Part shown: positions 3,057-57,761 of the stretch, in pieces
How the letters are laid out: every line of letters begins with the position of its first letter
Position numbering within the stretch: position 1 is the first letter of the stretch
Assembly (NCBI RefSeq): GCF_018977255.1
Contig: NW_024704751.1
Location: 16,492,001 to 16,556,000, forward strand
From: Callorhinchus milii
Lineage: Eukaryota
Length of the DNA: 64,000 bases
Reading direction: 5' to 3'
Program-made: the position numbers and the translations under genes
Notes under the pieces: model-generated
Seen by the model: the letters and a program-made list of their open reading frames with translations, nothing else
What the model was told of the DNA's origin: nothing
Database searches by the model: none

Positions 3057-16805
<13,749 letters not shown>

Positions 16806-17780: not shown

Positions 17781-17931
17781 NNNNNNNNNNNNNNNNNNNN
17801 NNNNNNNNNNNNNNNNNNNNNNNNNNNNNNNNNNNNNNNNNNNNNNNNNNNNNNNNNNNNNNNNNNNNNNNNNNNNNNNNNNNNNNNNNNNNNNNNNNNN
17901 NNNNNNNNNNNNNNNNNNNNNNNNNNNNNNN
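17781..17931. other. Assembly gap (N run) at the ARID1A 3' end
   Basis: 151 N bases. Confidence 0.99.
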
Positions 17932-30641: not shown

Positions 30642-33600
30642 TGAGCCCAGAGGTCGGAGCGCCATCAGCGGAGCTCTTCTGTTCCACTCGCGGCCACGCG
30701 ATTGGTGCAGAAAGTGGCCGCTCAGCCCACGGCGACGGGAACCGCTGACGTCCGACTGTTGTGCCAAACGAGCACAGGTTCTGACCGGGTGGATGTCGGG
30801 GGAACCCCCGTCCGCCTCTTCTCCTGCCGCTGCTGCTTCTCTCCGTCCGTCAAGGCCGGTTCTCAAGACCCGTTCTCTTCGACCGTGCCTTTGGTCTCCC
30901 TCACCATCTCTCTGCCTTCCCTCACCCCTACACCACCCCACCACCCCCACCCCCACGCTCGGGCCCGGACACCTGACCGTTCAGCCCTTTGGGACGTCCT
31001 CCCGACGTGAAAGGCGCTCTATAAATGTTGTTTTGTTGTGGTGGTGGTGGCGGCGGCGGCGGCGGTGGTTGTTGTTTCTCCTGATTAAAAGGCCATTTAA
31101 ATCCCATCAATCATTCTTTGTTTAAACTCACCCTCGAGATTCCAATTCATTTGCCGCCCATTTCATTTTGTGTAGAAGGTAGCGGTGCGGAGCCCGTGCT
31201 TCTCTATAACATTCCCTTTAAACTCATTATACTGTACAAATTGTACTGGGTAATGGGCTTCAGTGTGTGTGACCCAGATCCCAGATGTGGGGCTCAGCCG
31301 AGTGTTTCCTGTGTAACCAGATGTCTTTTGTTTGCAGCTGTCCTTACCTGACACGGCACCTGACTCTCGCCATCCCGATCATCGCTGGCTTCCTCTTCCT
31401 GTTTGTGGTCAGCGCCTTACTTCATACCAGCCTCAGTGACCCCGGCATTCTGCCCCGCGCCACACCCGAGGAGGCAGCTCACCTGGAGAGACAGATAGGT
31501 AACAGCAACAACAAGATCACATTGTATAGGGCCTTTCACGTCGGGAGGACGTCCCAAGGCAACTGGCCAGGCAGGAGGCAGCAGGGGGAAACCGGCCTGG
31601 CACTGGGCAGTCTTAGCTTTTGTCCCACTGAAATTTGTGTTCATTGGCCGCGGGAAATGTGCCGGAACCAGGAGCTGCTCTGTGCAGGATGAGGTGTTTT
31701 ATTCTGTCCCTTTGTGTGTCAGCAGCGTCTCTCTTGCAGATAAACTCTGTGGTTTGATTCCTTTTTTCTTGTTGTGCAACCTGGAGGATTCTGATGTATA
31801 TTTGTTTACATGTTGATGTTTTGATATTATGTTTTAAAAACAAGTTTGTTGATCATCATCCCCATTTTGAGGCACAGAGCTGCTGTGGGGTAACTGGCGT
31901 ACGGCACCATTTCACCCACAAGTTGGTAGAAATATTTTTAATCTGATGGGAGTGTTTAAAATTTCACGCAAAATTGGCCTGTGCGAGCTTCACTGCCGAT
32001 GTCCTGCGACTGACCGAGCCTCTGTTTCAGATAACTCCGGGGGATCCAGTTACCGGCCGCCACGCACCAGAGAGGTGCTGATCAACGGGCAGCCCGTCAA
32101 ACTCAAGTATTGTTTCAGTTGCAAAATGTTTCGGCCACCACGCACTTCACACTGCAGTTTGTGTGACAACTGTGTGGGTGAGTAGCAGCCTTGCCCCAGG
32201 CAGGAATGTGCTCTGTGATGTGGCCCCATAGTTGAGCTTTAATTCATAATAATAATCCTTGCATTTGATATAGCGCCTCATCACATCTTCGAGACATCTC
32301 AAAGCATTTCACAGAATACACTGTAAAGTGAATTGACTACATTTTGGTGGGGGGGTGGAGGGGAACACCCAAAAAACGAGTTTTATTGGAATGATCTGAA
32401 TGTTTTCTTTTCCCCCCTCAGAGCGATTTGACCACCACTGCCCCTGGGTTGGAAACTGTGTGGGGAAACGGAATTACAGATTCTTTTACATGTTTCTACT
32501 CTCGCTCTCATTCCTCACCGCTTTCATCTTTGCATGTGTGATAACACACCTCACGCTGAGTAAGTGCTTTACTCTCTCTCGTTAGATAATAAGGCTAATG
32601 AGATGCTGGACCTTATAAGAAGATGGTCTAGAACATAAGATACGGCAGCCGTCAGTCACACTTCATGTGCTGTTGTGTACATATTGGATATTAGGAAGAT
32701 AGACTAAAAAGTGTCTAGCAACAATTCACCAGTTTATGTGGCACAAAGTCAATTAGGGTTATATTCTTTAGAGTGGAAAGGGTGAACAGTTCAATAATGA
32801 ATGGAATTCATAATTGTGGGCGAATGTGTCAGGCATGGGGGTGAGGATTTGGGATGGGGGGTGGGGGGTGTGTAAAGAGAATGGAAGCAGCTGTTAACCT
32901 TTCACAATTTTTTACTCTTCTTCTAGGATCTCAAAGAATTGGGTTGTTAAATGTCCTCCAGGAATCTCCAGCCAGATATCCTTCGAGATATGGGGAGAGT
33001 GTGTTCTTGCTTGTCAGTGTGCGCGTGTTGATCTGTGTTTGCGTATGTGGGTCAGCGTGTATGGGTTTGTGTGCCTCAGTGTGTGAAGCAGTTACGTTGC
33101 GTTACATGGTACTTACCTTGACACCCTCACTGCCCTCGAGCTGTTGATCTGCTTTTTTTCTGTCTGGTCCATTCTCGGTCTTTCTGGCTTCCACACATAC
33201 CTCGTGGCTTCCAATCTGACAACCAATGAAGATGTAAGTACAACTGAATCTTCACATTTGATATAGTGCCTTATCAAGTCGTTGAGATGTCTGAAAGCGC
33301 TTCACAGAATATATTGTAAAGTGTTTTTGTGGGCGAAACACAGCAATGATAATACTAATAATCTTTGCATTTGATATAGTCCTTTCATGTCTTCTCGACA
33401 TCTCAAAGCGCTTCACAGAATAAGCTGTAAAGTGAATTGACCGTATATATATTCTGTGGGCAAAACTCGGCAGCCAATTGCGCACAGCAGTGTCCCACAA
33501 ACCGTCGTGGATTGAAAATTACCAATTTATTATTATTTTGTTTTGGAGGGATTATTATTAGGCTCTGTGTGGAGTAAGAAAACTTGCCCAAGGTTTCACC

Positions 33601-38249: not shown

Positions 38250-39694
38250 ACTCCCAGCCTGTTAGCATTGCTGGAGTCTTCCCGGCCCTTCCCAGCAGTG
38301 CGGTGGGGGTCTGTCACTCACAAGCTGCCTGATGTGATGCCGTCCAGTCTTGTGTGCCGGGAGCAGTAGCTGCTGCACAGGCGGAGTTTCTGACTGTTGG
38401 ACGTGAAGGTGACCAGTGCCGTAGAGGAAAGCTGCAGAGGGAGCAGTGTGGCACCAAGTGAACCATTCAGACACAGAATATTCATCTGGCAGGTGCAACA
38501 GCTTTGTTCTGCCTGATTCTAATAATCTAATGAATATGTAGTTCCTTTCCTGACTCAGGCTGCAATAATACAGGCACCATCACCCTGTTCTGCACCTGGG
38601 TGACTGCTTCACCCTGTCAGAGAAGGTGTGTATCTGCCACAGTGGGTATCTGCAGGGGGAACTGAAATGAGAGTGGTCAGAACACGGTACGGGTAATAAT
38701 CAACGCTTCTTACGCACTAACGTTTAACAGGTTTAGAGATGCTGTCATTTATTATCCGAACAACATTATCTTAAACTTCCTGTGTTCCACACAAAGTCTT
38801 TTAGCATCAGTAAAGCAGGAAATTAGGAAGCTGGTGGCAGGGGCTGGTACTGTGTGCTATTGCCAGAACCCAGGCGTGTAGATTTGTTTGTGGCTCTGAA
38901 TTGTTCAGAAGCGTTCCAGGACACCTCACCGGTACCTGTCTGACCTGAGCTGGTTTGGCACCTTGCAGCGGAAAGTGTGTTAGATTTATTCTGTGAAAGT
39001 GACATTTTAGTAAGCGAGGAAGAGAGTGGCAGTGAAACCTTTACTTTAATGTCACAGTATGATCATTATTCACCAATACTGATTTGTATAGTTTGTTGCT
39101 TCAGGTGTTATATAAAGTGCCTTCTGCAACTGCTTTGTAGAAATCAAATGCCTCTGTTCACACATACTGTCATGTACCCACAGCAATAAATAAATTAATT
39201 ACAGGGAATTAGCTATTGTTTCAAAGTCAGTCTTTTCAACTGTTTGAAAGAACCACCTCACCCTTATTCATCAGGGAAATGTAGAGTGTGTGACAAGCAT
39301 TCCAGATTCAGTAATCACTTGTTCTTTTATCCCATCTCCGAGAGTCAGTGTCCACAGCCACCGTCATGAATTGGGGATGTGTAAACACCCCAATCATTAC
39401 ACCCAGAGGCAAAGATCAACAACATGAACAGATCAGTGAGATTTCAGATCCAAGAACTTTTATTCCTTGCATAAAAAAATAAATTTGATGTCAACGACAA
39501 ATTACATTTGTATAGCACCTTGCATTTCGGGAGGACGTCCCAAGGCACTGGACAGCCAAGGATTTGGACCCAAGCAGGGGGTTGGGATGAGAGGGCGAGG
39601 AGGGTAGGGGTGTTTTACAACGTAACAATGTGTGTTTTACAACATAAGATCATTGTTGTTCTTGTGTCCACAGCATTGTGAAAAGCTGTGGGTT

Positions 39695-40023
39695 CTAGCT
39701 GTGTCCTGGATCACAACTCGAATGTGGCAGCTCTTTGCTCTCTATTTCTTTAAGCAGGTGTGGCTGGTGCTTCTGAAGCAGGCTGTGCAAAATATCCATT
39801 GCATCATTTCCCTTTTTAATCACAAAATTCAGGGTTTCTCTGACTTGTTCTTTCAGGAGGTTGACACTGATAAGCTTCTCGTACTCTGCCTCATTGAGGA
39901 TTTCCCAGTGGCGCAGCTCTTCGATCGAACTGTTGATCTCGGGGATCCTGCAAGTCAGGGTTAGCTTGTTTCTCTGCAGGAAATGCTTGTCTGTCTTCAC
40001 ACTCAACTGTCTGTCTCCTGTGA
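39695..40023 (-). CDS. Terminal exon of the unnamed gene: CARD domain
   Basis: [38 protein letters not shown]...[36 protein letters not shown] follows the six-helix CARD pattern of ASC/NLRP1/CARD8-type CARDs. Confidence 0.88.
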
Positions 40024-43000
40024 CTATAAAAAGACGTCCTCAGCTATGGCTCGCTTCACTCATAGTGGGAAAGTTGAATTTCTATAGTACTTGTGTGAAA
40101 ATATCTCAAAGTATTGCCAAGCATAATGACCGGTTTGTAGGTAAATGAGAATATAATAATAATCCTTGCATTTGATGTAGCGCCTTATCGGGTCTTTGAA
40201 TCCATTAGAGCTTAGGCTTACAAGGTTAACAGGAGCTGAGTGTGATGATTCCCTGCCCCAGTGACTGGTCTGCCTTTCGGGGTGCTGCCGATGAGCCAGG
40301 CTGGCTGTGCGGTCATCTGTAGTGCCCTGGAATATTGCATACCCGCCTGGCTCGGGAACCGGACTATGCGATTCCGGCATCCTGTTGCCAGGCACGCCTG
40401 TTCCAGCTACAAGCCACTCACTTACCTTGACACAGGCAAGAAAGTCACAGAACTTTGTAATCAGCACAAGTACAGGAAAGAGTTGATCAATATTGAAATC
40501 GCTTTACCTTCAGCCTCGAGAACAATATCACCCTCAGGTTTGTTCTTGAGCACGTATTCAATACTGTTTTGACGGCTGATGCGCAAAGGAAGATCACCTG
40601 CAAAAATATAACAATTTTTTTTTGTAAAAGCAGCACAAATCCTGCAAGCCCCAAATTACAGTGACTGGGAAACTGCGAGGGCTCGGCAATCCAGGGGATG
40701 GGGGGCGTTGGAGGGGCGTCTGCGAGATCACCTTCTTCTTTATAAAACACGGCAAGGTTTTCCTCTGGAAATGTCAGTTCCAATTCGGTGCGGAATTGCT
40801 CGTAAGTGATTTCTTGATGGATTCTCAGGATGCAGTGCTGCTCCCCTTGCACTTTGACCAGGATATGATCTACAGGAAGTAAACAAGGTTGGGAAATCAG
40901 TCGGCTGTTCTTTGAGTCAATCCCTCTGAAAGACATTGACATGATCGAACCCTTCTGTGCAGTTGCTGATGGGCCTGGATTGGTACCTGTGCACCTCTCA
41001 ATTTTGGAGTTAGATTAGCTATAGATTAGCTAATAGTATAGATTAGCTATAATTTAATAGAACAGGCTCGATGGGCTGAGTGGCCTATTGCTGTTCCTAT
41101 ATTTCTCCCCCAGCATGAAAGTCAATATAAGTGACAGCTAATAAATACAAATATAGTTCCTAACGTAGCGGTTGAGCGAGCGATGGAATTGTTCTGAGCA
41201 CTAGCCAGAGGATGATGGACAGACAAGAATACCTTGGTTTTCATGCTGGAGCATCTGCTCAGTGAGGACTTCGGACAACACTTCCTGGTCATCATCCTCC
41301 CGCACCAGTTGGAGCTCGAGGGGCCAGGCAGTGACCTGCGACTGGTTCAGCTGCAGCATAAACTCCATTTCCGTCTTGAATTTCATGGTCTTCTGGTAAC
41401 AGAATCTATTAAATAACAGCCTACACTTCTATAGCACCCTCCACGCAGGGTAGTGTCTCAGAGCGCTTATCAGTGGCTTGGTGAGTTTGTCTCCAGTCAA
41501 ATCCTTGCCTGTCCAGCGCATTGGGCGGTCCTCTTGACATGAAAGGCGCTATACAAATGTAATTTGTTGTTGGTAAGTTTATCCTACACCAATTTTTACT
41601 GAGTAAGCCTGGACTGTGAGAAAATCTTTGTGCTTTTTTGGGGGGGATAAAGATTGGGAGAAATCTATGTGTAAGAGCATGTGCAGACTCGGTATCGTTC
41701 ATTCGGTAAATAACACAATAATTTACCTGTGGCATAATAGAGATGAAGTTAGTTTTCATCTTAGACTGAATATGAAGTCTGTAGTACATGTTCTTGACCA
41801 CACAGATTTTTTTTTTGAACACTTGCTTGCAATCTTTGTACTTTTTGTTCAAACTCTAGGGATGGATGGCAACAGAATCCAAAGTAATACACACCGTAAC
41901 AGATACAATACACGCGCTTCAAACTGTGTAATAAATTTCTGTAATTATCAAACTACAATAAACCTGGAATTACCGGACTCTGGGAACTGGGAACTTGACC
42001 CTTGGTGGAGCGGCCAGAAACAGAAATTTTCATTCATGCACATGTGGCTAGATTCCTGCTGGCTCACTCTCCTAACACGCACCACCCTCACTGTGCTCGC
42101 TGGCCTTCAGTGGCCGGGCAAATCGACTTTAACTCAGTTTGAATCCCACAAGCAGAAGAGACCTTATTCTTAGAAGGATGGTCATTATCCCTAAAAAAAA
42201 ACTAGTGAGAGAACCCAGGTTTGATTCCCAAGTGGGGCAAAACCTTAGGTAAATTTCCTTACTCCATATACCTTTGTTAACCTAGCAATGAGTAGGAACC
42301 CAGTTGTTAGTTGATTGGCAGATTGCTTTCCTGAGGTGGTAATACCTCTTCCCCCCAAAACATTTGGTCATTCAATCCACGAATGTTTGTGGGACACTGC
42401 TGTGCGCAATTGGTTGCCGTGTTTCTCCCACAAAATCAATCAATCAATCAATCAATCCACTTTACAATATATTCTGTGAAGTGCTTTGAGACATCTCAAC
42501 AGTGTGCTAAGACTCTATATCAAATGCAAAGATTATCATTATTATTATTATTGGCTATCTTCTGCGCATGGGATTCAAACAATTACATTGCCGATACTGG
42601 AAATTCCGACGAGCTGGACCAGATCTCCCACAAACACCCCCCCCCCCCATCCCCTCCAGTCCAGCTCATCGGAGGTTTAGCTTATTCACATAATCTAATC
42701 TAAAGGTAGCGGAAGATGAAATGAAGTACCTGAACCAAGTCCTCTTTTTCTCGGATCAGATGAAAAAACATAATCATTTTGTTTTGAATGTAAGCCCGGC
42801 CCACGGGCTTGTAGAGCAGGCAGTAAGCCTCACATTTATTCCAATTCGTCAAACATTTGACCAGCATGATGATGGAACAGGAGTCCAGCAGAACCCAGAC
42901 GTGAGTCTCATTGGCAGCGAGTGGCAGGAAAAGCTCAACATTCCCATTTGTGATGTGTGCGACTTGAACTGGAGGAGGGAGGAATAATATCTTGGTCAAT

Positions 43001-46000
43001 CAGGAGTTTAAAAAGTGGGGCAGCAGCAGGTAAATTAATTCTCAGATTAGTTATGGTTAAGAGCGAAGTACTTGTGCTGGTGTGCAGTGCGTTGCGATGC
43101 AATTGAGGCCAGTCTCTGATCAGGGCTCCGGTCTCCTTCACAAAATCCCACAACTCCTCCAACGCTTTCTCTCCTTTAGACAGAGTCAGGTCAACAACAG
43201 CACCAGTATCATTTAGCTCCAGGTAACCGAGTACAAGCTGTGGACGACATTAACACACAAAGTTTACATCGCCGTTTCCACAATTGATGGGATATCAAAA
43301 CTATCAGAAAAAAAGTCTGTTACAGAGGCACAGAGCAATCACCTGTCACCAACGAGGCTTTTATCAGGAGTGAGTTGTGCTGTCCCAGATGAATACTGGG
43401 ACTGGTGACAAAGGCAGCGAAATAGTATTGAAAATTCTGTCATGATCCAATAAACTGAACAGGCTTGATGGGCTGAATAGCCTCCTCCTGTCCCGAGGTT
43501 TCTAATGCATTTGAGTTCAATCTCGTACTCAAACAGGAGGCAATGGATTGGGAACCCACCCTACTTCCTCAATCTAATTCCCCAGCCTACACAAATAGGT
43601 GTGACATGCGTGTCCAGCAACTGATCTCAGCTGCACCAAGTGAGGGCTGGACCAGGGGCACTGATCAAAATGAAATCTGTACCTTCTTCTCTTCATTGTT
43701 GAACAGATTCTGCAGCTTTTGGAATAAAGAGTTTTTCAGATTCAGATATTCCTCCCGGAAGAAAAGCATCAGATTGTCTTTTATGGCAGAAGGGGTGATG
43801 CAGCTTCCTGTAAGAGTAACGCTGTTAAATTAACACCCAACAGAAAGAGTGCAGGATAAAAGTCTCACCACCTGCTTCCCACCCATTGCCATTGGGTAAC
43901 TTACAGTATGCCTTCCCCCTAATGTTAACCCAGTGAAATCCCCTCACAAGTGAGTGGACCAGGGTTCAATTCCCTGGCGGGTGAAACCCTGTAAGTTTCT
44001 GTACATCATGCTCCTCTGTCTACCTAGCAGTAAGTAGGAACCCGGGCGTTAGTCAATTGGCAGATTGCTTTCTGGGGGTAATAATCCCTCAGGAAAAAAA
44101 AATGTGGTCACCCAATCGATGGCTGTATGTGGGACTCTGCTGTGCACAATTGGCTGCCGTGTTTCGCCCACAAATACAATAGTGAATTGTGAAGCACTTT
44201 GAGACAAGTCAATGACGTGATAAGGCGCTATATCAAATATAAGGATTATCAATATTATAAATTAGACACTTATAAACTCCTCCATCCTTGTGTGATTCTG
44301 GAACACCACATACAAGAGAATACTCAGAAACGTACAAAACCAGGAGCAAAGTTAGCCCAGGATCTGAATTAAATGTTTAACAATGCATTGGAAGGAAATC
44401 AGCTCCAACATTGCACTGGGATCATTCTGGCCACTCAGACAGATGCTCAGTAGCAGACTCTGGCACTGCACGGAATATTCTGACATCTGACATTACATTT
44501 GTGGAGTCCTGTAGCTCAGTGGTTAGAGCACTCGCTTTGCAAGTGAGAGACCTAAGTTCAATTCCAGGCAGAGGGCGAAACCTTGGGCAAGTTTCCTTAC
44601 TCCACACAGAGCCTAATAATAATCCCTCCAAAACAAAAACAATAATAAATTGGTCATTTTCAATCTACGGCTGTTTGTGGGACATTGCTGTCTGCAATTG
44701 GCTGCCGCGTTCACGCACAAATATACAGTCAATTCACTTTACAGTGTGTTCTGTGAAGCTCCTCCCGACGTGAAAAGCGCTATATCAATTGCAAGGATTA
44801 TTATTATTATTCTCTTAGTCAAACATGTGTAAAACTGTTCATTTACCAAAAACTTTCAAAATGTGTCCCTGCCATTAAGACCAAAACAGTACCTTCCATC
44901 ATCTTTTATGAAATACATTAAAGAGAAACAAATGTTGTGTTAAATGGTTTAACTTGAGGTTCAGTGTCTGTGATGCTCACCTGAAGATGAGGGGTATTTG
45001 GGAAGAAACAGCAGCAGGTGTGTCCCAGGAGCATCTGTGTGCAGGTCAAAGGCTGGGCCAGCCAACGACATCTGGTCCAAGAAAGCATCCATCTCCTCCA
45101 CTTTCATCTCTCTAACATTTAGTGATTTGTTGCGTTGATCGTAAACAAGACCAAGGTTGCCATGGACCAGTGTGACTACTGGTCGATGCCTATCATCAGA
45201 GCAGGAATACATTAAATGACACAGTGCCACACACTGAATCACATACTCTTACCCAACCACATAGGTGAACCAAAGCCATTGCCCATTTGACTGATTAGTG
45301 CATATGGAATTGTCCTCCAGCACAAACTGCACATTGGAGGGGGGGGCACTCTTATTTTCAAAATAAATTGACAATTTTTTAAAAAAACTCCCAATATTGT
45401 TAGATTGAGTTGTCTATCCTATCCAACTGGACATCTTGTTTCTATTTAGGAATATAGGAACAGTAATAGGCCATTCAGCCCCTCAAGCCTGTTCTGCCAT
45501 TCTATTAGATCATGTCTGATCTCTACCTCAACTCCAATTACCTACCCTTGCCCCATATCCCTTGATCGCTTGATACTCTGACCTAACAAAAATCTATCCC
45601 CCTCAGTATTGAAAATTTGAATGGATCCAACATCCACAGCCATTTGGGGGAGAGAGTCCCAGATTTCCACTACCCTTAGTGTGAAAATGTTTCTTAAGAA
45701 ATGAAACAGTCCATCTGTCCTGATCAGGATCCTACAGACATTCAGCTGAGTCTGGAGACTTTGCTGCATTTACAAATCGCTGTTAAAACAAACAGAAACT
45801 GAGCCATGGGGTACCTTGAGGCCACTCACCCATCTCGCTGCCTGGACTTGAGCTGCTGCTTATAGCCTTGATTACCATCAATCACTCGGATAATGTCCAT
45901 GTTTGAAACCACATCTGAAAGAAGATGTGAGAGAGTTTCCTGACCAACAATCCCCCAAAACGAATTGATCTTCTCATGGCTGTTTGTTGGGCATCGTTGC

Positions 46001-48404
46001 GTGAAAATTGACTGCAACCTTTGTGTACACACGCACAGTATCTATACTTGACAACAATTACCTTGGAAGCGCTATCAGACGTTTTAAAAGTTATAGACGC
46101 TTTAATCAAACACAAGGATTCTTGGTGGATTGCTATTCCGGGGGTAACAATCCCTTACAAAAAAAGAAAATTTGGTCACTCAATCCACGACTGTTTGTGG
46201 GACGCTGTTTTGTGCATAATTGGCTGCCGCATTTCACCCGCAAAAATATACAGTCAATTCACTTTACAGTATATTATTGTGAAGCGCTTCGAGACATTTC
46301 AAACATGAAAAGGCACTAGATCAAACGCAAGGAATACTAATTATATATAGCATTACATACCAACCGCCAATGCTGCCCCCACCACTAGGTTTAGCTGTGG
46401 ATAACACTTGTATTCCCGGCCTCTGGAAAGGAGCAGGAAGCACAGCTCTGTGAATGCCACACCACGCACCTCAATCATTCTCTTCAGAAGGTGGAACATG
46501 CGTTGCTGATGGTTGTACCAGGAATCCCTTGCTGTCTCCTCAATGTCTCGATCACTGAAATCAAGGTCTCTGGCCACTGTTGTCCACTCATTGGACAGAG
46601 TCCCTGACAATCGGAACAGCCATGGATCAGCAGGTGAAGGGGTTTTAAAACCTTCATGATTCCAAATAATTGAGTCCAGATGGTGGTTTGCATGCAGCGG
46701 GATGTGGGGAAGGTCGACTGAGTCAGGGTCCAGCACAGTTACTGCACAAAGGTGAAAAATAGTTTATTGTGAATTGCTTACATGTCTCACGCTTACATTC
46801 TCTGCCACTTGAACGCTTTCTCACACTCGCTTACTTGCTCTGACAGTGGCCGCTCTTTCAGCCACTACGCACCAAAACTCTGGAACACTCTTCCTCTATC
46901 CCTCTGCCCTTGCCCCTTCCTTCCTCATCTTCAGATCGTACCTGAAGACCTTCCTGTTCGACTGTGCCTATGGTCACCTCTCCCCTTCCCCCCCACACTG
47001 GCTCGATGTCGTGCTCTGCCACTATCAAGCGCAATGGGACCCTACCCTGTGTGAGGGGCGCTACGTAAATGCAAGTTGTTGTTGTTGAACACACTTGCTA
47101 AAATTCGCACACTCACTCGCAGTTTGCTGCTGAGTCATGGTATCGGGGTAGCTGCTCCTCAGCTCTCGGCTGATGTGTGGAAAGCCTCGGGCTGAGCAGA
47201 GTGTGAGGAAGGCATTGGCTGCCGTGGGACCGTACCACACCACCATGTCCGTCTTCTGAGCTGCCATCTTTAAAAATGACTTAATATTGTATCGCTCCTG
47301 CAGAAGAAAGAGGAAACTGGGAATAATTAATTGTGAGTGTCCAGGAGTGTGGCAATGAGTAGGAATCTCAATCCCCTCCTGTCATATTCTTCACAGAAAG
47401 GCACAATCAAATGACTCTATGATCTGGAATGCACTGCCTAAAAGTGCGGTGGAAGCAGATTTAATAGTAGGTTTCGAAAGGGAATTGGATTGGGACTTGA
47501 AAAGAAAAAATATACAGGACTGCGAGTAAGAGTGGGGGAGTGGGACTAGTTGGATAACTCTTTCAAAGAAGGTTGTGGGTTCAAGGTATCCGAGGACTTG
47601 ATCTCACATCCAGGCTGACACTTCAACAATTAAAGGGGGGGAACACTGCATTATCAGACATGTTGTCTTTCAGAAGAGATGTCAAACCGAGATGTTTCTC
47701 CTCATATTCTGGTCAACAATTCTCCAGATAAACTGGTCGACATTTGGAAAACAAATCCACATTAAACAAAAGGATGTACCTCCAGGAGGTAGAAATTAAC
47801 GCACCGTGATAAAGGTGTGCTTCTGGAGTAGCATCTTTGCATTATTAACCGCCTTGGCCCATCTGATACCTAAGGAGAATGAAACAAGTTAAATCACTGG
47901 CTGATGAAAAGCTTGACATACATTGAGGGGGACAGCATGGAGTTACCCAGAGTTACAGGCAGGAAGATCTTGTGTCCCTGGAGATGGTGGAAGGTTCGGT
48001 ATTTCTGGTGTGGTCGCTTCAGAGACACAAGGAGCGCATGCAACAGCTCCCGTTTACACCACTGCATTTTGTCCTCCGGGATTGAGCCACCGCTGAACCT
48101 CTCTTGCTGAAGCATCCGAAACAGCTCCTGGTAAAAGTCTCCTCTCTTCTCTCTGATCCAGTGCTCTGCCAGATCCCTCATGTCTGTAGGGAACTCTGGG
48201 CAGCAAGTGATTAAGGAAGCAAAGAGCTGCAGGTCCAACTTATTGACATCCAAATCTCCAGCTATTTGGATAGACATCTGTAACAGATTGCCTGATGGAA
48301 AGGCAACATTAGCACAATTACTTGGACATCTGCTTATATTGGACGCTATTCCTAATCTAAGATCCCAGATGAGATTCGTGCCCATCTCTCCTCCAGCCCT
48401 CCCT

Positions 48405-48436
<32 letters not shown>

Positions 48437-49919
48437 GAATGCAAAAATAATATTGTACCTATTTCTTGATCTTGATGCAGTAAATCCAAATAAACCTTTT
48501 GGAAGCTTTCAAGGCTAATGCTGGATAAATATTCATTGCTCACTCGCATCAGAGCTTTTGCAACCTCCGCCAGGGTTTGGCCTCCGTGCTTACAGAGGTC
48601 TTCCAGCTCCTGCAGCCATCCTTTATTTGTCGGACACCCGGAACTGGTGCAGAGAGTGGGTCCCATCTCCAGCTCTGGCTTCAGCTGCTGTAGTAATGGC
48701 CTAATGTCACCTTCACAAAGACATCAAACACAAAAACCTCAACGTTTCGTAAGAACATAAGAATTTGCTGAGCGAAAGGTCCATCCATCATCCAAGTCGC
48801 CTTCCATCGTCCTGGCAGTCGCTTGACATGTCTTGTCCCAAACAACGTATTGTATTCTGAGATATTATTTCCTAACAGAAAACTATGTAATTTGTTCTTG
48901 AAAGAATTAACACTTTCTGCTTCCACTGTGGGGTCAAGAAGCTGTGGTGTCTGTGTCACCATCGCGGTGAGGGTTGAGGAAGTGGTTGGGAAATCTGAGG
49001 GCATTCGCACAGAATCGAAGCGGAACAAAGTGCTTTGTTCAATTTCATTTCATTTCCGAACAAACGCAATGAATGAGAAATATCTCCATCGCCCCCTCCC
49101 CCCCCACACCCCTACCCCCACCCCCACCCCCCACACACACACACCTGGGACTACACTCTGTGCCAAACCAGGTCACTCTGCCCCCCATCCCCACCCCACC
49201 CAGTGATTCCTTCTGCTTTGCTTCTCGTAACTAACTCCTGGTCTCAGCCTTACCTCCACCTGCTCACACTCCCTCCCTCCCCCCTCCATCCCTCTCTCTA
49301 TCCCTCTCCTCCCCTTCCCCCCTCCCTCCCTCTCCTCCCCTCCCTACCTCCATCCATCCCTCCCCTCCCTCCCTCTTCTCCCCTCCCTCCCTCCATCCAT
49401 CCATCCCTCTATCCTCCCTCCCTCTCNNNNNNNNNNNNNNNNNNNNNNNNNNNNNNNNNNNNNNNNNNNNNNNNNNNNNNNNNNNNNNNNNNNNNNNNNN
49501 NNNNNNNNNNNNNNNNNNNNNNNNNNNNNNNNNNNNNNNNNNNNNNNNNNNNNNNNNNNNNNNNTCCCTCCCCTCCCATCCCTCTATCCCTCCCTCTCCT
49601 CCCTCCATCCATCCCTCTCCTCCATCCCTCCCTCTCTCCTCCCCTCCCTCCCTCCCTCCCTCCCTCTCCCCTCCCCTCTCCCCCCCCCCGGCAGCCACTC
49701 ACCCTGTGCTGTGTGCAGTTGCTGGAGGCAGCCGATGACTCCGGTCTCCAGGGAGTCCATGAGATCGATCCCCACCGACAGATACCCCGAGTCCATCGAT
49801 TCCCAATCGCAGTCGTCCCCGTGTGTGAGGGTCAGTTTGGCCCCGAGGCCGCGCCCCCCCGACCCGCTGTCCTCCCGCCCGCACTTGGTCCTCTCTAACC
49901 GGACACGCGCCGTCGACAT
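39695..49919 (-). CDS. Unnamed multidomain NLRP1/CARD8-like FIIND-CARD protein (degron - PYD-like - Death - ZU5[CARD insert] - UPA - PB1 - CARD), about 1036 aa
   Basis: 16 GT-AG exons splice into one open frame of 3111 nt: 49919-49703, 48710-48459, 48291-47947, 47869-47805, 47297-47117, 46741-46361, 45914-45830, 45189-44981, 43807-43683, 43237-43072, 42968-42730, 41855-41727, 41392-41233, 40869-40732, 40597-40508, 40023-39695 (TAG). All phases are compatible. Minus-strand AATAAA at 39464-39459. Confidence 0.85.
40508..40869 (-). CDS. Two exons of the unnamed gene encoding a PB1-like domain
   Basis: [46 protein letters not shown]|[30 protein letters not shown]: Lys on strand beta1 and OPCA-like YKEEGD. 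Confidence 0.72.
41233..45189 (-). CDS. FIIND (ZU5+UPA) exons of the unnamed gene, with a CARD-like insert
   Basis: LGLVY...AGPAFDL...LFLPKY (ZU5 N-half), [15 protein letters not shown]...HVWVLLDSC|SIIMLVK...CLLY...FHLI (cleavage region), YRL...[24 protein letters not shown] (UPA end). Confidence 0.82.
42200..42551 (+). mobile_element. tRNA-derived SINE, longer subfamily, diverged
   Basis: B-box remnant, gtaggaacccagttgttagttgattggcaga segment, (TTA)n tail. Confidence 0.75.
43955..44250 (+). mobile_element. tRNA-derived SINE, longer subfamily, diverged
   Basis: GGTTCAATTCC B box and shared body and tail. Confidence 0.75.
44501..44811 (+). mobile_element. tRNA(Ala)-derived SINE with an L2-like tail, full-length copy
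   Basis: A box TAGCTCAGTGG, TGC anticodon-like loop, B box GTTCAATTCC, tail gcgctatatca..tgcaagga(TTA)n. Near-identical to the copy at 57439. Confidence 0.9.
45445..45700 (-). mobile_element. CR1-like LINE 3' fragment
   Basis: [16 protein letters not shown]...F..E.DRFL and tail homologous to 51800-52030. Another fragment near 48756-48950. Confidence 0.75.
46130..46340 (+). mobile_element. 5'-truncated SINE copy
   Basis: Shared body: caatccacgactgtttgtggg...aattggctgccg...actttacag. Confidence 0.72.
46361..46741 (-). CDS. Death-domain exon of the unnamed gene
   Basis: [69 protein letters not shown] matches the DD pattern W..lAR.LgFS..dIe.i......eq...mL..w....G..at...L...L...gR. Confidence 0.82.
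46800..47087 (+). mobile_element. L2 LINE 3'-end fragment
   Basis: [16 protein letters not shown]...LKTFLF with tail aaatgcaagttgttgttgtt. Similar fragments at 20650-20895 and 61140-61410. Confidence 0.78.
49427..49563. other. Assembly gap inside a C/T-rich low-complexity tract (49270-49690) in intron 1 of the unnamed gene
   Basis: N run flanked by CCCT/CCAT repeats. Confidence 0.97.
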
Positions 49920-49929
49920 CGCGACCCGA

Positions 49930-50045
49930 ACACCCGCACCACCGCCCCCGACTCCGCTGTCCCGGGAGGTAACGGTCCGCGAGATTGTTCAGGGTCGGGG
50001 CGTGGCCTTGGGACTGGGGGGAGGGGCTGGAGGCGGGGCTTGGCA
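49930..50045 (-). promoter_or_regulatory. Candidate GC-box promoter or 5' UTR of the unnamed gene
   Basis: CpG-rich. Minus-strand GCCCCGCCT and GGCCACGCCCC (Sp/KLF-type) motifs lie 80-120 nt upstream of the ATG. In-frame stop at 49991-49989. Confidence 0.45.
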
Positions 50046-51132
50046 CGGGGTGTGTGGGGAGGGTGTGGGGTGGGGGGGGGTGTGTGTGGGGAGGGGGGTT
50101 GGGGTGTGGGGGCTGTGTGGGGGGGTGTGTGTGGGGAGGGGCGTTGGGGTGTGTGGGGGATGGTGGGGTGTGTGGGGGAGGGTGGGGTGTGTGTGGGGTG
50201 GGGTATGTGTGGGGTGGGGTGTGTGGGGGTGTGTGTGGGGTGGGGTGTGTGGGGATGGTGGGGTGTGTGTGGGGTGGGGTGTGGGTGTGTGGGGTGGGGT
50301 GTGTGGGGGGTGTGTGTGGGGTGGGGTGTGTGGGGGGTGTGTGTGGGGTGGGTGTGTGGGGGGTGTGTGTGGGGTGGGGTGTGTGGGGGTGTGTGTGGGG
50401 TGGGGTGTGTGGGGATGGTGGGGTGGTGTGGGGTGGGGGTGTGTGGGGGTGGGGTGTGTGTGGGGTGGGGTGTGTGGGGGATGGTGGGGTGTGTGGGGGT
50501 GGGTGTGTGGGGGTGGTGGGGTGGTGGGGGTGGGGGTGTGTGGGGGGGGTGGGGTGTGGTGGGGGGGTGTGTGGGGATGGTGGGGTGTGTGGGGGGGTGG
50601 TGTGGGTGGGGTGTGTGGGGGTGGTGGGGGATGGTGGGGGGTGGTGGGGGGTGGGGTGTGTGGGGGGGTGGTGGGGTGGTGTGTGTGGGGAGGGGTGTGT
50701 GGGGATGGTGGGGTGTGTGTGGGGTGGGGTGTGTGTGGGGAGGGGTGTGTGGGGGATGGTGTGGGGTGTGTGGGGGGGTGAGGGTGTGTGGGGTGGGGTG
50801 TGTGTGGGGAGGGGTGTGTGGGGGGGTGGGTGTGTGTGGGGGGGGTGTGTGGTGGGGTGGGGTGTGTGTGGGGAGGGGTGTGTGGGGGATGGTGGGGTGT
50901 GTGTGGGGTGGGGTGTGGGGGGGTGGTGGTGTGTGTGGGGGGGTTGGGTGTGTGTGGGGAGGGGTGTGTGGGGGATGGTGGGGTGTGTGTGGGGTGGGGG
51001 TGTGTGGGGGGTGGTGGGTGTGTGTGGGGTGGGGTGTGTGTGGGGGATGGGGTGTGTGTGGGGGAGGGTGGGGTGTGTGTGGGGTGGGGTGTGTGTGGGG
51101 TGGGGTGTGTGGGGGATGGTGTGGGGTGTTGG
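50045..51132. repeat. G/T-rich low-complexity tandem array (GGGGT/GTGT), potential G-quadruplex tract
   Basis: About 1.1 kb made almost entirely of G4-5 runs separated by T/GT spacers. Confidence 0.95.
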
Positions 51133-51409
51133 GGACAGACAATTTGGCCATAAATGAAAAAAACCATTTGATTTGAGTCACAATTTTTTTTATTGAGGAA
51201 TCAACCACCTGCAGCTCTCTGCGCTCGACTTTCTGGGCAGGACTCACGCGCTCGGGCCGGCGGACGCTCCCCCTCCGCTGACACTGCACGCACAGCCTGT
51301 CTGCCCGCCGGGCAACGCAGTCTCCGTCTCTGCTCCTCACACATCTGTCCCTGACAAAAGTCTGGGGAAGACCACCGTTCTCATCTTGTGATGTGTCTCT
51401 CCAGCCCGT

Positions 51410-54400: not shown

Positions 54401-55832
54401 CCATTTCTCTGCTCTTAGTTGAGCAGTGGATGTCTGGTAGGAGGAAATGTGACTTAGACATGAACAACAAGGACATTCTAAAGAAAATCGAATGAACTTT
54501 GCTCCTAAATTTCTAAAATTGGAGCAACCAAACACCTGAATGTTTTGTGGATGCCCCATGTTATAACAGAGGAAAATATCCATGTTTGCACTTTCCCACA
54601 TCCTAATCATAACAGGAGGAATGATGGCAGTTGACACAAAGAACTGTCTCTCCACAACGCCTTTCCTTTACTTATTGGATGTCCCATAGCTTACCCAGCT
54701 TCCCAAACTGTTCAATGAGATCCATTTTGGACAGGATATTGATGTGTGGCAGCTCCACATTCAGCATAGTCGCCAGTGATGTGCAGAGTATTGAGATGAA
54801 CTTCGAAGCATCAGTGCAGTAATGCGAGTCAACCAGGTGAACAGCAGCTAACTAGGGAGCAACATACACAGATGGTTATAGAGTGAGTGACAGAGAGAGA
54901 TAATAGTAATAATCCTTGCATTTGATGTAGCCCCTTATCGCATTGTTGAGACATCACAAAGTGCATCACAGAATATGTTGTAAAGTGGATTGACGGTGTA
55001 TTTTGTGGGCGAAACGCAGCAACCAATTGCGAACAGCAGCGACCCCACAAACAGTTGTAGATTGAGTGACCACTTTTTTTTAGGAGAGTGATTATTACTT
55101 CCGAAAAGCAATCTGCCAATCACTAACAACCGGGTTCCTACTTTCTGCTAGGTAAATAGAGGCGTGCGGAGTGAGGAAAACTTGCCTAAGGTTTCTCCCC
55201 GCCCCGGGAATGAAACCCGGGTCCTCTCACTTGCAGGGCAAGTACTCTAACCACAGGAAGCCACCAATACGCTACAGATGGTAGACAGAGGTCAGAGTCT
55301 GGTTACACGGTAACTAATGAGGGACAGAGAGGGAGACAGTAACTGGAGAGTTACTGACAGAGAGAAAGTCTTCAATTATTGTTCAATTATTAGCAGCTGA
55401 ACATGAACTCACTCTGAAATTCCACTTCGTTAATTGTGCAACCATATTCTTGACCGAGGAATGATGCGTGTAGAGCTCCACCTGACCCGGGCAGTCAAAG
55501 AGGAAGTAATGATCTTTATATTGTTCCAGTTTCTCCTGCAGCCAATCGAAGTTTGCCTCCAGGTATTCCATGCAGTAAATCAGACCCCCATTAGGTCCCA
55601 ATTTCAGATTGTCCATCACATCGTCCAGAGTCACCAACTCAGCAATGTCCACGCTGCACTGATAGGGGATTCTGTCATTGGCCGGGTCCAGGTTCACCAC
55701 TGCTACCTTGCGGCCCATCTTAGAGAGAAACTCCTGCATCCCCGAGCAGTAAGTGGTCTTCCCTGAGCCTGGTGGGCCGATGACCACCTGGCCAAAGGCC
55801 AGGCCAGGAGCCCTGGGCTCCACAGACACCAT
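51410..55832 (-). CDS. GPN2: GPN-loop GTPase 2 (313 aa)
   Basis: Exons 55832-55413, 54851-54695, 54357-54197, 53866-53736, 51482-51410. P-loop [42 protein letters not shown]-terminal QEKY...EEAMDL*. AATAAA at 51194-51189. Confidence 0.95.
51800..52420 (-). mobile_element. CR1-like LINE 3' fragment
   Basis: [57 protein letters not shown] and an (TTCTTA)-like tail are typical of the CR1 ORF2 C-terminus. Confidence 0.88.
52425..53265 (+). mobile_element. L2-like LINE ORF2 3' fragment
   Basis: [16 protein letters not shown]...[10 protein letters not shown]...PVLARLHWL...RIDFKI...APYLSDLL, ending in a ...tataagtgcaagttgttgtt tail. Confidence 0.85.
54900..55258 (-). mobile_element. tRNA-derived SINE, longer subfamily
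   Basis: Homologous to the 28305 copy. Confidence 0.78.
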
Positions 55833-57438: not shown

Positions 57439-57761
57439 GTGGAGTCCTGTAGCTCAGTGGTTAGAGCACTCGCTTTGCAAGTGAGACACCTGAGTTCAAT
57501 TCCAGGCAGAGGGCGAAACCTTGGGCAAGTTTCCTTACTCCACACAGAGCCTAATAATAATCCCTCCCAAGCCAAAAGCAATAATAAAAATTGGTCATTT
57601 TCAATCTACGACTGTTTGCGGGACATTGCTGTGCGCAATTGGCTGCCGCGTTTGCCCACAAATATAGTCAATTCACTTTACAGTGTGTTCTGTGAAGCGC
57701 TTTGGGACGTCCTCCCTAAGTGAAAAGTGCTATATCAAATGCAAGGATTATTATTATTATT
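57439..57761 (+). mobile_element. tRNA(Ala)-derived SINE, full-length copy
   Basis: Same head, body and (TTA)n tail as the 44501 copy. Confidence 0.9.

What the first reader, a model, noticed from the sequence alone, without database searches (positions are those of the whole stretch)
39695..49919. Unrecognised 16-exon FIIND-CARD gene with a novel architecture: candidate new inflammasome or death-signalling sensor
Seen: 16 minus-strand GT-AG exons splice into one stop-free frame of 3111 nt (1036 aa), with a poly(A) signal downstream. Read by motif, the domain order is: DSGYLS degron, helical region, PYD-like region, Death domain, ZU5 N-half, CARD-like insert, ZU5 C-half with H...SC|S, UPA, PB1, CARD. 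Known: NLRP1 and CARD8 autocleave in FIIND, and proteasomal destruction of the N-terminal piece frees UPA-CARD, which polymerises and activates caspase-1. Inference: this NACHT/LRR-less protein joins that switch to several death folds and a PB1 polymerisation module. I know of no described protein with this layout, so it may be a lineage-specific innate-immune system in a cartilaginous fish.
Basis: partly seen in the sequence, partly recalled or inferred. Interest (0 to 1): 0.96.

Follow-up and report, generated by a model that had tools for sequence, protein, structure and literature searches.

The report
Shark death-domain FIIND-CARD gene, unnamed family
This is a real, intact 16-exon gene of a cartilaginous fish that joins a death domain, a divergent NLRP1/CARD8-type FIIND region and a CARD, and it belongs to an unnamed family predicted in several shark genomes that no paper found here describes.

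Summary
Sixteen minus-strand exons (49919-39695) have GT-AG borders and consistent phases and sum to 3111 nt. An AATAAA lies 231 nt after the stop. The N gap lies inside intron 1, within one CTCC-type repeat array. Homologue collinearity leaves no residue missing between exons 1 and 2.

All 16 exons align in order to a 1058-aa Heterodontus protein. The family has 9 database proteins from 7 shark species, all named "uncharacterized protein".

- **Shown:** an NLRP1/CARD8-like CARD, a death domain and the cleavage-loop part of FIIND.
- **Weak:** UPA and PB1.
- **Not supported:** the PYD-like region and the CARD-like insert. The ZU5 N-half is not shown.

The FIIND Phe at P1 is Cys here and His or Cys in the relatives. 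F296H cripples CARD8 autocleavage (PMC3210808), so the autoproteolytic switch is doubtful.

RNA contigs show intron 15 spliced and fit four more junctions, but many contigs are unspliced.

Verdict: a new variant of the FIIND-CARD kind, moderately interesting. The exons were never joined. Earlier first-reader notes of this scan cover this same stretch and other FIIND-CARD genes in this genome.

The parts
49703..49919 (-). Exon 1 (217 nt). It holds the start codon and the DSGYLS motif at 49776-49793.
   Evidence: The ATG follows an in-frame stop 24 codons upstream, and the donor is GTGAGT. 17 residues around the motif align to P0005 at E 1e-3. The motif is kept in P0005, P0001 and P0007. There is no RNA evidence for this exon.
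49427..49564 (.). Assembly gap (N) inside intron 1
   Evidence: CTCC/TCCC repeat arrays abut both sides. The E1/E2 junction is collinear with the homologues. The gap was not filled or looked up.
47117..48710 (-). Exons 2-5 (48710-48459, 48291-47947, 47869-47805, 47297-47117). They encode an N-terminal alpha-helical region with no known family.
   Evidence: There is no Pfam hit at E<=0.1. Each exon aligns to P0005 at 39-50% identity. Exon 3 searched against 1.84 billion representatives found only this family. The Atlas gave no usable hit.
46361..46741 (-). Exon 6. The death domain lies at about 46362-46628.
   Evidence: Pfam Death gives E 0.0038, which is below the cut-off. AF2 gives pLDDT 86-95 over residues 40-126. 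The best VIA match is the ankyrin-G death domain (Z 11.4, rmsd 2.4, 89 aligned), and the top 17 rows are all death domains.
44981..45914 (-). Exons 7-8 (45914-45830, 45189-44981).
   Evidence: They align to P0005 457-480 and 488-556. No FIIND or ZU5 hit was found. X1 contig record 8 covers 44980-45194 and departs from the genome at both exon borders.
43072..43807 (-). Exons 9-10 (43807-43683, 43237-43072). They encode an insert of about 97 residues before the FIIND cleavage strand.
   Evidence: They align to P0005 560-602 and 607-655. There is no Pfam hit. The stretch is helical only in a low-confidence AF2 model. The 290 unplaced letters of X1 record 8 equal E9 plus E10 minus 1 (inference).
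42730..42968 (-). Exon 11. It holds the FIIND-type strand with S-C-S at 42874-42882, a His at 42955-42957 and a His at 42901-42903.
   Evidence: Pfam FIIND gives E 0.0036 on profile positions 89-125 of 131. The family profile places its s-c-s-P on the S-F-S-P of NLRP1. X1 record 6 covers exactly 42730-42968.
41233..41855 (-). Exons 12-13 (41855-41727, 41392-41233). This is a putative UPA-like region.
   Evidence: They align to P0005 739-781 and 798-840. UPA-FIIND hits occur only in 3 of 7 homologues, at E 0.026-0.066. The Atlas feature search of the equivalent P0007 region gave FIIND and ZU5/UPA clusters, scores 0.77-0.84, which is a lead only.
40508..40869 (-). Exons 14-15 (40869-40732, 40597-40508). 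They encode a small PB1-like (beta-grasp) module.
   Evidence: Pfam PB1 gives E 0.02 on exon 14 and 0.0067 in P0007. The strand-helix order is bbabbab in a low-confidence AF2 model of P0005 842-915. Intron 14 is retained in contigs of X1 and X2.
39695..40023 (-). Exon 16. It holds the CARD at about 39737-39985 and the stop codon.
   Evidence: Pfam CARD gives 1.3e-9. The 10 best PDB sequence matches are NLRP1 or CARD8 CARDs. X2 contig record 9 joins 40508 directly to 40023.
39459..39464 (-). AATAAA poly(A) signal
   Evidence: It lies 231 nt after the stop. Contigs reach at least 39530 to 39559.

Best explanation
The stretch is an intact, expressed protein-coding gene of a cartilaginous fish. 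It encodes a death-fold signalling protein of about 1036 residues without NACHT or LRR domains. The protein belongs to the FIIND-CARD kind (CARD8/NLRP1-like), within an unnamed family found so far only in sharks.

The domain order is as follows:
- a conserved DSG[FY]xS motif;
- an alpha-helical region of about 250 residues with no known family;
- a true death domain;
- a divergent FIIND-type region, of which the cleavage-loop strand is clear and the UPA is probable, preceded by an insert of about 97 residues;
- a small PB1-like module;
- a CARD closest to those of NLRP1 and CARD8.

Inferred mechanism: the FIIND-like region and the N-terminal part keep the C-terminal piece silent. When the N-terminal part is lost or altered, the UPA-(PB1-like)-CARD piece oligomerises and recruits a CARD partner of the ASC or caspase-1 type. 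The death domain and helical region would be the regulated or sensing part, and the DSG motif a possible handle for its degradation.

Shown here: the gene structure, the CARD, the death domain, the FIIND cleavage-loop homology and the family. Inferred: every step of activation. Whether the protein cuts itself at S-C|S is open. I give it about one in three.
For: - **Gene:** (details under the observation check).
- **Transcription:** X2 contig record 9 joins 40508 to 40023, exactly intron 15. X1 records 6 and 8 stop at the borders of exons 11 and 8.
- **CARD:** Pfam 38.3 bits against a cut-off of 23.9. NLRP1 and CARD8 CARDs are the 10 best of 28 PDB sequence matches, at 9.7e-5 to 4.6e-3.
- **Death domain:**
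- **FIIND:** window exon 11 gives E 0.0036. 7 of 7 homologues hit at E<=0.1, and P0011 scores 28.3 bits against a cut-off of 25.8.
- **Cleavage-site alignment:** the profile alignment places the family's H..(26)..s-c-s-P on NLRP1's AH..SFSP.
- **Conserved residues:** the P1' Ser is kept in 8 of 8 sequences and the His 8 residues upstream of P1 in 8 of 8.
- **Atlas lead:** the feature neighbours of P0007 477-915 are FIIND/UPA/ZU5 clusters in 10 of the 10 rows shown (lead only).
- **Known mechanism:** release of UPA-CARD by N-terminal degradation, and UPA-promoted CARD filaments, are described in the abstracts listed (PMC7483925, PMC7794386, 10.1101/2022.03.22.485298).
Against: - The P1 Phe of the SF|S motif is Cys in the window and in 4 group-B proteins, and His in 3 group-A proteins. 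CARD8 F296H was 'severely defective' in autocleavage (PMC3210808 passages).
- The His-270 equivalent is Gln in 2 of 8 sequences.
- Every FIIND hit covers only profile positions 85-129 of 131. No hit covers the ZU5 N-terminal part.
- The UPA and PB1 hits are all below Pfam's cut-offs.
- The full-length AF2 model of P0005 failed (mean pLDDT 31.8), so no fold evidence exists for exons 8-15.
- A region search with the P0011 FIIND part found no NLRP1 or CARD8. That tool also missed group A, so this says little.
- Many contigs read through introns, and intron 14 is retained in the one contig that shows intron 15 spliced.
- No functional data exist.
Confidence: 0.5

Rival explanations
1. The protein is a non-cleaving scaffold. 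The FIIND-like region is a structural ZU5-UPA module, as in UNC5, the ankyrins and UNC5CL, that holds the death domain and the CARD in a closed state. The protein then works as a two-headed adaptor, as RAIDD/CRADD does in the PIDDosome. Its death domain binds a death-domain partner and its CARD recruits a CARD caspase, with no autoproteolysis and no N-terminal degradation.
For: The P1 Phe is absent in 8 of 8 sequences (Cys or His), and F296H cripples CARD8 cleavage (PMC3210808). The nearest structural matches of the death domain are ankyrin death domains, including the ankyrin-B ZU5-ZU5-UPA-DD tandem (Z 10.2-11.4). A death domain plus a CARD in one chain is the RAIDD layout (recalled).
Against: The S-x-S-P loop, the P1' Ser and the upstream His are kept across two paralogue groups that are only about 35% identical. 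That fits a working site. The CARD is nearest to the NLRP1 and CARD8 CARDs and not to RAIDD.
Confidence: 0.35
2. The protein is an NF-kB-type or autophagy-type signalling scaffold. In this reading the PB1-like module and the DSG phosphodegron dominate, giving p62/MEKK-like head-to-tail assembly with turnover through SCF-beta-TrCP, and the CARD is used for CARD9/BCL10-like signalling and not for caspase activation.
For: There are weak PB1 hits. The DSG[FY]xS motif is conserved in the window and in 3 of 3 group-A sharks.
Against: PB1 is below the cut-off everywhere and is seen in only 1 of 7 homologues. Group B lacks the DSG motif. The CARD's nearest relatives are inflammasome CARDs.
Confidence: 0.1
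3. The feature is a gene-prediction artefact or a decaying pseudogene.
For: Many RNA-guess contigs are unspliced. Intron 14 is retained, which would shift the frame and lose the CARD. Exon 1 rests on a 17-residue match only. The window's own protein was not found in the protein databases.
Against: There are 16 of 16 exons with open frames, 15 of 15 GT-AG introns and consistent phases. All exons are collinear with the homologues at 39-72% identity. A spliced contig covers intron 15.
Confidence: 0.04

Closest known systems
CARD8 (human FIIND-CARD protein without NACHT or LRR)
   Same: Both lack NACHT and LRR and have a FIIND-type region followed by a C-terminal CARD. The CARD is among the best sequence matches (E 1.3e-4). 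The catalytic Ser and the His 26 residues upstream are in place in the window protein.
   Different: CARD8 has a short disordered N-terminus. This protein has about 480 residues before the FIIND region, with a helical region and a death domain. It also has an insert of about 97 residues before the cleavage strand, a module of about 75 residues between UPA and CARD, and Cys in place of Phe at P1.
NLRP1 (PYD-NACHT-LRR-FIIND-CARD)
   Same: Its CARD is the best solved-structure sequence match (9.7e-5; profile 1.7e-7). Its FIIND cleavage strand aligns with the family.
   Different: This protein has no NACHT, LRR or PYD by Pfam, in 16 exons and 7 homologues.
ZU5-UPA-DD proteins (ankyrins, UNC5, PIDD1)
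   Same: The death domain is structurally nearest to ankyrin death domains (Z 11.4 and 10.2). Both carry a ZU5/UPA-type region in the same chain as a death fold.
   Different: The order is permuted, with the death domain before and not after ZU5-UPA. The C-terminal death fold is a CARD. PIDD1 cuts at HFS sites (PMC3210808).
RAIDD/CRADD
   Same: It has one CARD and one death domain in one chain (recalled).
   Different: RAIDD is about 200 residues, has CARD first and has no FIIND (recalled; not tested here).
NCBI 'uncharacterized protein' of sharks (such as LOC119966370, LOC125464833, LOC121291735)
   Same: They belong to the same family. Group A is collinear with all 16 exons at 39-72% identity per exon.
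   Different: They are predicted models only. No name or paper was found. Group A has a linker of about 42 residues before the CARD that the window gene lacks.

Membership tests
FIIND-CARD proteins (NLRP1/CARD8 type) | C-terminal CARD of the NLRP1/CARD8 type | tested here: met
   Pfam CARD gives 1.3e-9 and 38.3 bits against a cut-off of 23.9. The top 10 PDB sequence matches are NLRP1 or CARD8.
FIIND-CARD proteins (NLRP1/CARD8 type) | ZU5-like subdomain: C-terminal strand and cleavage loop | tested here: met
   Window exon 11 matches FIIND at E 0.0036, below the cut-off. 7 of 7 homologues hit, with P0011 at 28.3 bits against a cut-off of 25.8.
FIIND-CARD proteins (NLRP1/CARD8 type) | ZU5-like subdomain: N-terminal part (FIIND profile positions 1-85) | tested here: inconclusive
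   No hit covers these positions in 16 exons or 7 homologues. Exon 8 found nothing relevant in the PDB. A likeness of exon 8 to the FIIND consensus is only recalled.
FIIND-CARD proteins (NLRP1/CARD8 type) | UPA subdomain | tested here: inconclusive
   UPA-FIIND hits occur in 3 of 7 homologues at E 0.026-0.066, all group B and all below the cut-off of 27 bits. There is none in the window exons. The Atlas neighbours are a lead only.
FIIND-CARD proteins (NLRP1/CARD8 type) | S-F|S autoproteolysis motif | tested here: not met
   The window has S-C-S, group B has S-C-S and group A has S-H-S. The P1' Ser is kept in 8 of 8 sequences, but the P1 Phe is absent in 8 of 8.
FIIND-CARD proteins (NLRP1/CARD8 type) | Conserved His needed for processing (His-270 of CARD8, 26 residues before P1) | tested here: met
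   The window has a His 26 residues before the Cys (with spacing). In the family the His is present in 6 of 8 sequences, and it is Gln in P0005 and P0001.
FIIND-CARD proteins (NLRP1/CARD8 type) | Autoproteolysis into two associated fragments | not testable with these tools
   This needs protein expression and immunoblotting.
Death domain superfamily, DD subfamily | Six-helix death fold closest to death domains | tested here: met
   AF2 gives pLDDT 86-95. The top 17 VIA rows are all death domains, and the first CARD is at rank 18 with Z 7.5. Pfam Death gives E 0.0038, below the cut-off. Caveat from the tool: Z under about 13 is common for helical bundles.
PB1 domain | Match to the PB1 profile and a beta-grasp fold | tested here: inconclusive
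   Exon 14 gives E 0.02 and 15.3 bits against a cut-off of 23.6. P0007 gives 0.0067, which is 1 of 7 homologues. There is no PDB sequence hit. The bbabbab order appears only in a model with pLDDT under 50.
   No PYRIN hit at E<=1 in 16 exons or at E<=0.1 in 7 homologues.
   There is no Pfam hit on exons 9 and 10. hhalign against the family's own CARD and death domain gave nothing, but its control (death domain against CARD) also failed. No usable structure model exists.

The most novel reading that the evidence does not exclude
This would be a chondrichthyan-specific inflammasome-type sensor with several new features:
- a phosphodegron (DSG[FY]xS) and a death domain feed a degradation-triggered switch;
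- the FIIND works with Cys or His in place of the canonical Phe at P1, either by a changed autoprocessing chemistry or by a cleavage-independent release;
- an extra PB1-like polymerisation module sits between UPA and CARD.

That would be a natural variant of the NLRP1/CARD8 mechanism with a new input (kinase and SCF ligase, or a death-domain receptor) and a new assembly module.
Probability: 0.15. Interest if true: 0.85.

Novelty: new variant of a known kind. Interest (0 to 1): 0.6.

Why it matters
FIIND proteins (NLRP1, CARD8) are the model for 'functional degradation' sensing, and their range of architectures outside mammals is poorly charted. This family places a death domain, an unknown helical region and probably a beta-grasp module around a FIIND-CARD core. 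It has been kept in two paralogue groups across sharks.

Its natural S-C-S and S-H-S loops test directly whether the buried Phe is truly required for FIIND autoprocessing. The protein could also link death-domain signalling to CARD and caspase output in the oldest jawed vertebrates.

The gene sits between a ZDHHC-like gene and a GPN-type GTPase gene, in a block that also holds BAF250 and PIG-V genes. That gives a fixed address for tracing its gain or loss in other vertebrates.

Tried and rejected
- **Full-length AF2.** The model of the closest homologue (P0005, 7-row alignment) failed, with mean pLDDT 31.8 and pTM 0.20. I used only its secondary-structure line, as a weak hint, and ran no fold search on it.
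- **hhalign.** I compared sub-alignments cut from A1 (insert, middle region and N-terminal region against the family's own death domain and CARD). All gave probabilities of 2.5% or less. The control (death domain against CARD) gave 0.4%, so the test had no power.
- **Region search with the P0011 FIIND part.** It returned only 4 group-B proteins. It missed even group A, so it says nothing about NLRP1 or CARD8.
- **Profile search with A1.** It returned the same 9 proteins as the single-sequence search.
- **Atlas search of the P0005 N-terminal region.** No usable hit.
- **PDB sequence searches.** Exon 11, exon 14 and exon 8 on their own gave nothing relevant.
- **False hits.** P0002 and P0004 are repeat proteins matched in many short stretches (P0004 is a WASH-complex protein). 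I dropped them as false.
- **Papers.** Searches for FIIND with cartilaginous-fish terms, for the five LOC numbers, for FIIND with PB1, and for FIIND with basal-vertebrate names found no paper on this family. Supplements were closed and not consulted, and an evolutionary table in some supplement could list these genes.
- **Pseudogene or artefact.** Rejected (see the rival explanations).

Full report
**1. The observation**

Reading the minus strand of 39400-50200, listing stop-free stretches and scoring splice sites gave 16 exons. Their coordinates are listed under the observation check. One search shows 15 of 15 introns with GT..AG and pyrimidine-rich acceptors, consistent phases and a total of 3111 nt. 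It also shows an in-frame stop 24 codons before the ATG, a TAG stop at 39695-39697 and an AATAAA 231 nt further on. Each exon's in-frame part is stop-free. The bases that open the split codons are G, A or GG, so no split codon is a stop.

**2. The gap**

The N run at 49427-49564 lies in intron 1. Tandem Repeats Finder shows the same CTCC/TCCC array abutting both sides, at 49269-49424 and 49565-49686. In an alignment with three shark homologues, exon 1 runs up to six columns before the first residue of exon 2. Those six columns equal the last five residues of exon 1 (which MAFFT misplaced) plus the split codon. So no coding exon need lie in the gap. Its true length and the physical continuity were not tested, and no read evidence covers the E1-E2 splice.

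**3. Homologues**

- Exon 3 (114 aa) searched against 1.84 billion representatives gave 4 hits at E<=0.001.
  - Two are family members: P0001 (1042 aa, 5.7e-9) and P0003.
  - Two are repeat proteins that I dropped.
- Searches with P0001, and then with a 7-sequence profile, each gave the same 9 proteins. All are NCBI 'uncharacterized protein' entries, from Scyliorhinus torazame, S. canicula, Heterodontus francisci, Stegostoma tigrinum, Cetorhinus maximus, Carcharodon carcharias and Mustelus asterias.
- They form two groups that are about 35% identical to each other.
- tblastn of 7 of them against the whole window hit only the gene. For P0001, P0005 and P0007 it gave 12 segments that stop at the predicted exon borders.
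- Exon-by-exon blastp placed 16 of 16 exons in order, and abutting, on P0005. The identity is 39-72% per exon. E-values are 1e-3 for E1 and E7 and 1.5e-5 or lower for the other 14.
- Against the group-B protein P0010, 13 of 16 exons reached E<=0.003. E1, E7 and E9 did not.
- The window gene is therefore a group-A-like member.
- P0005 has about 42 residues between the exon-15 and exon-16 equivalents that the window lacks.
- The window's own protein did not appear in any search, so it may be unannotated. I cannot be sure of that.

**4. RNA**

No run is on record as RNA. 11 listed runs hold part of the stretch. Contigs of four runs were laid on 39500-45300.
- **Direct evidence:** X2 record 9 (829 nt) lies on 40508-40871 and then on 39559-40023, which is exactly intron 15 removed. 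The same contig keeps intron 14.
- **Consistent evidence:**
  - X1 record 6 covers exactly 42730-42968 (exon 11), with 28 further letters lying elsewhere.
  - X1 record 8 covers 44980-45194 (exon 8), with 290 letters before it and 24 after it lying elsewhere. Exons 9 and 10 together are 291 nt, and one base is ambiguous at the junction. This fits a contig of E7-E8-E9-E10, but the other pieces were not listed, so it is an inference.
- **Against:** many contigs read through introns (X1 records 1, 2, 5 and 7; X2 record 15; X4 and X6 records). X4 and X6 show no spliced piece and no cover of exon 16.
- Exons 1-7 were outside the stretch that was laid.

**5. Domains**

- **Pfam, exon by exon.** Only the CARD on exon 16 passes the curated cut-off (1.3e-9). 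Below the cut-off are Death on exon 6 (0.0038), FIIND on exon 11 (0.0036, profile positions 89-125 of 131) and PB1 on exon 14 (0.02). Eight exons have no hit at E<=1, and the other hits look like chance (clamp_Gag1-like, V-SNARE, zf-RING_14, DUF6359).
- **Pfam on 7 homologues at E<=0.1.**
  - FIIND: 7 of 7. Only P0011 is above the cut-off, and all hits cover profile positions 85-129 only.
  - CARD: 6 of 7. P0003 lacks the C-terminus.
  - Death: 4 of 7.
  - UPA-FIIND: 3 of 7.
  - PB1: 1 of 7.
  - PYRIN, NACHT and LRR: none.
- **CARD.** The CARD exon's 10 best PDB sequence matches are NLRP1 or CARD8.
- **Cleavage strand.** The family profile aligns its strand ending in s-c-s-P to the S-F-S-P of rat and human NLRP1. 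The domain E-values there are weak (53 and 31), and the total score is carried by the CARD.
- **Death domain.** An AF2 model of exon 6 with an 8-row alignment gave pLDDT 86-95 over residues 40-126.
  - Foldseek found no match at E<=0.001, but its 12 best rows are all death domains.
  - VIA-align put 17 death domains on top. Ankyrin-G is first with Z 11.4, rmsd 2.4 and 89 aligned. The first CARD has Z 7.5.
  - The tool warns that such Z values are common for helical bundles. Taken with the Pfam hints, I accept a death domain.
- **Atlas.** The feature search of P0007 477-915 listed CARD8-like, FIIND, NLRP1 and ZU5/UPA clusters (scores 0.77-0.84, lead only).
- **N-terminal helical region.** It has no relative outside the family.

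**6. The cleavage site**

The passages I read in D'Osualdo et al. 2011 (PMC3210808) say the following:
- The second Ser of SF|S is required.
- Phe-296 is a buried anchor.
- F296H is severely defective in autocleavage.
- His-252 and His-270 are crucial.

In the window, exon 11 has a His 26 residues before the P1 position, as His-270 is before Phe-296, and it has the P1' Ser. The P1 residue itself is Cys. The relatives have Cys (group B) or His (group A), and two of them have Gln at the His-270 position. The loop is conserved, which suggests function, but the canonical anchor is missing. I therefore rate autoprocessing at about one in three.

**7. What it most likely does**

The most likely reading is a CARD8/NLRP1-like signalling protein whose CARD is the output, and whose N-terminal part (DSG motif, helical region, death domain) is the regulated input. 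A non-cleaving two-headed adaptor linking a death-domain partner to a CARD partner is the main rival. Both are inferences from the domain content.

**8. Context**

The window also holds the following:
- a BAF250_C gene (5.9e-121);
- a PIG-V gene (4e-92);
- a GPN-type GTPase exon (1.8e-52);
- ORFs that look to me like ZDHHC18 and GPATCH3. Those two names are recalled and were not confirmed by Pfam.

From memory this matches the human 1p36.11 block, where no such CARD gene lies.

**9. Novelty**

No paper on this family was found. Supplements were closed. The family is predicted but unnamed in NCBI. I file it as a new variant of the FIIND-CARD kind.

Noticed in passing
window 40598-40731: Intron 14 (134 nt, not a multiple of 3) is kept in contigs of X1 and X2, including the X2 contig that has intron 15 spliced out. 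If this is a real isoform, it would shift the frame and lose the CARD. It may instead be pre-mRNA.
   Followed up: partly
window 44506-44576 and 57444-57514 (+): There are two tRNA-Ala(TGC)-like heads (ARAGORN) inside repeats whose contig depth is enormous (up to about 730,000). This looks like a tRNA-derived SINE family, with one copy in intron 8. Other high-depth repeats lie at about 40082-40275, 41440-41633, 42216-42603 and 43962-44349.
   Followed up: partly
window 50047-51133: An imperfect microsatellite array about 1.1 kb long (unit GGGGTGTG and similar) lies directly upstream of exon 1. It creates long spurious ORFs on both strands.
   Followed up: no
window 13057-16805, 24614-25789, 31285-31692, 55383-55832, 63277-63882: The neighbouring genes include BAF250_C (ARID1-type), a PIG-V mannosyltransferase and a GPN-type GTPase, all confirmed by Pfam. 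Two further ORFs look to me like ZDHHC18 and GPATCH3 but have no Pfam hit. The order recalls human 1p36.11, and the CARD gene sits where I recall SFN in human.
   Followed up: partly
window 41678: All four laid runs show one extra A in an A-run of intron 12. This is either an assembly slip or a fixed difference.
   Followed up: no
window 17781-17931: A second N gap lies outside the finding.
   Followed up: no
Atlas cluster listed, rank 13: A chordate cluster of 171 members carries FIIND, UPA-FIIND and Death domains together (automatic name 'NLRP1b allele 5-like'). So combinations of FIIND and a death domain exist elsewhere and deserve comparison with this family.
   Followed up: no
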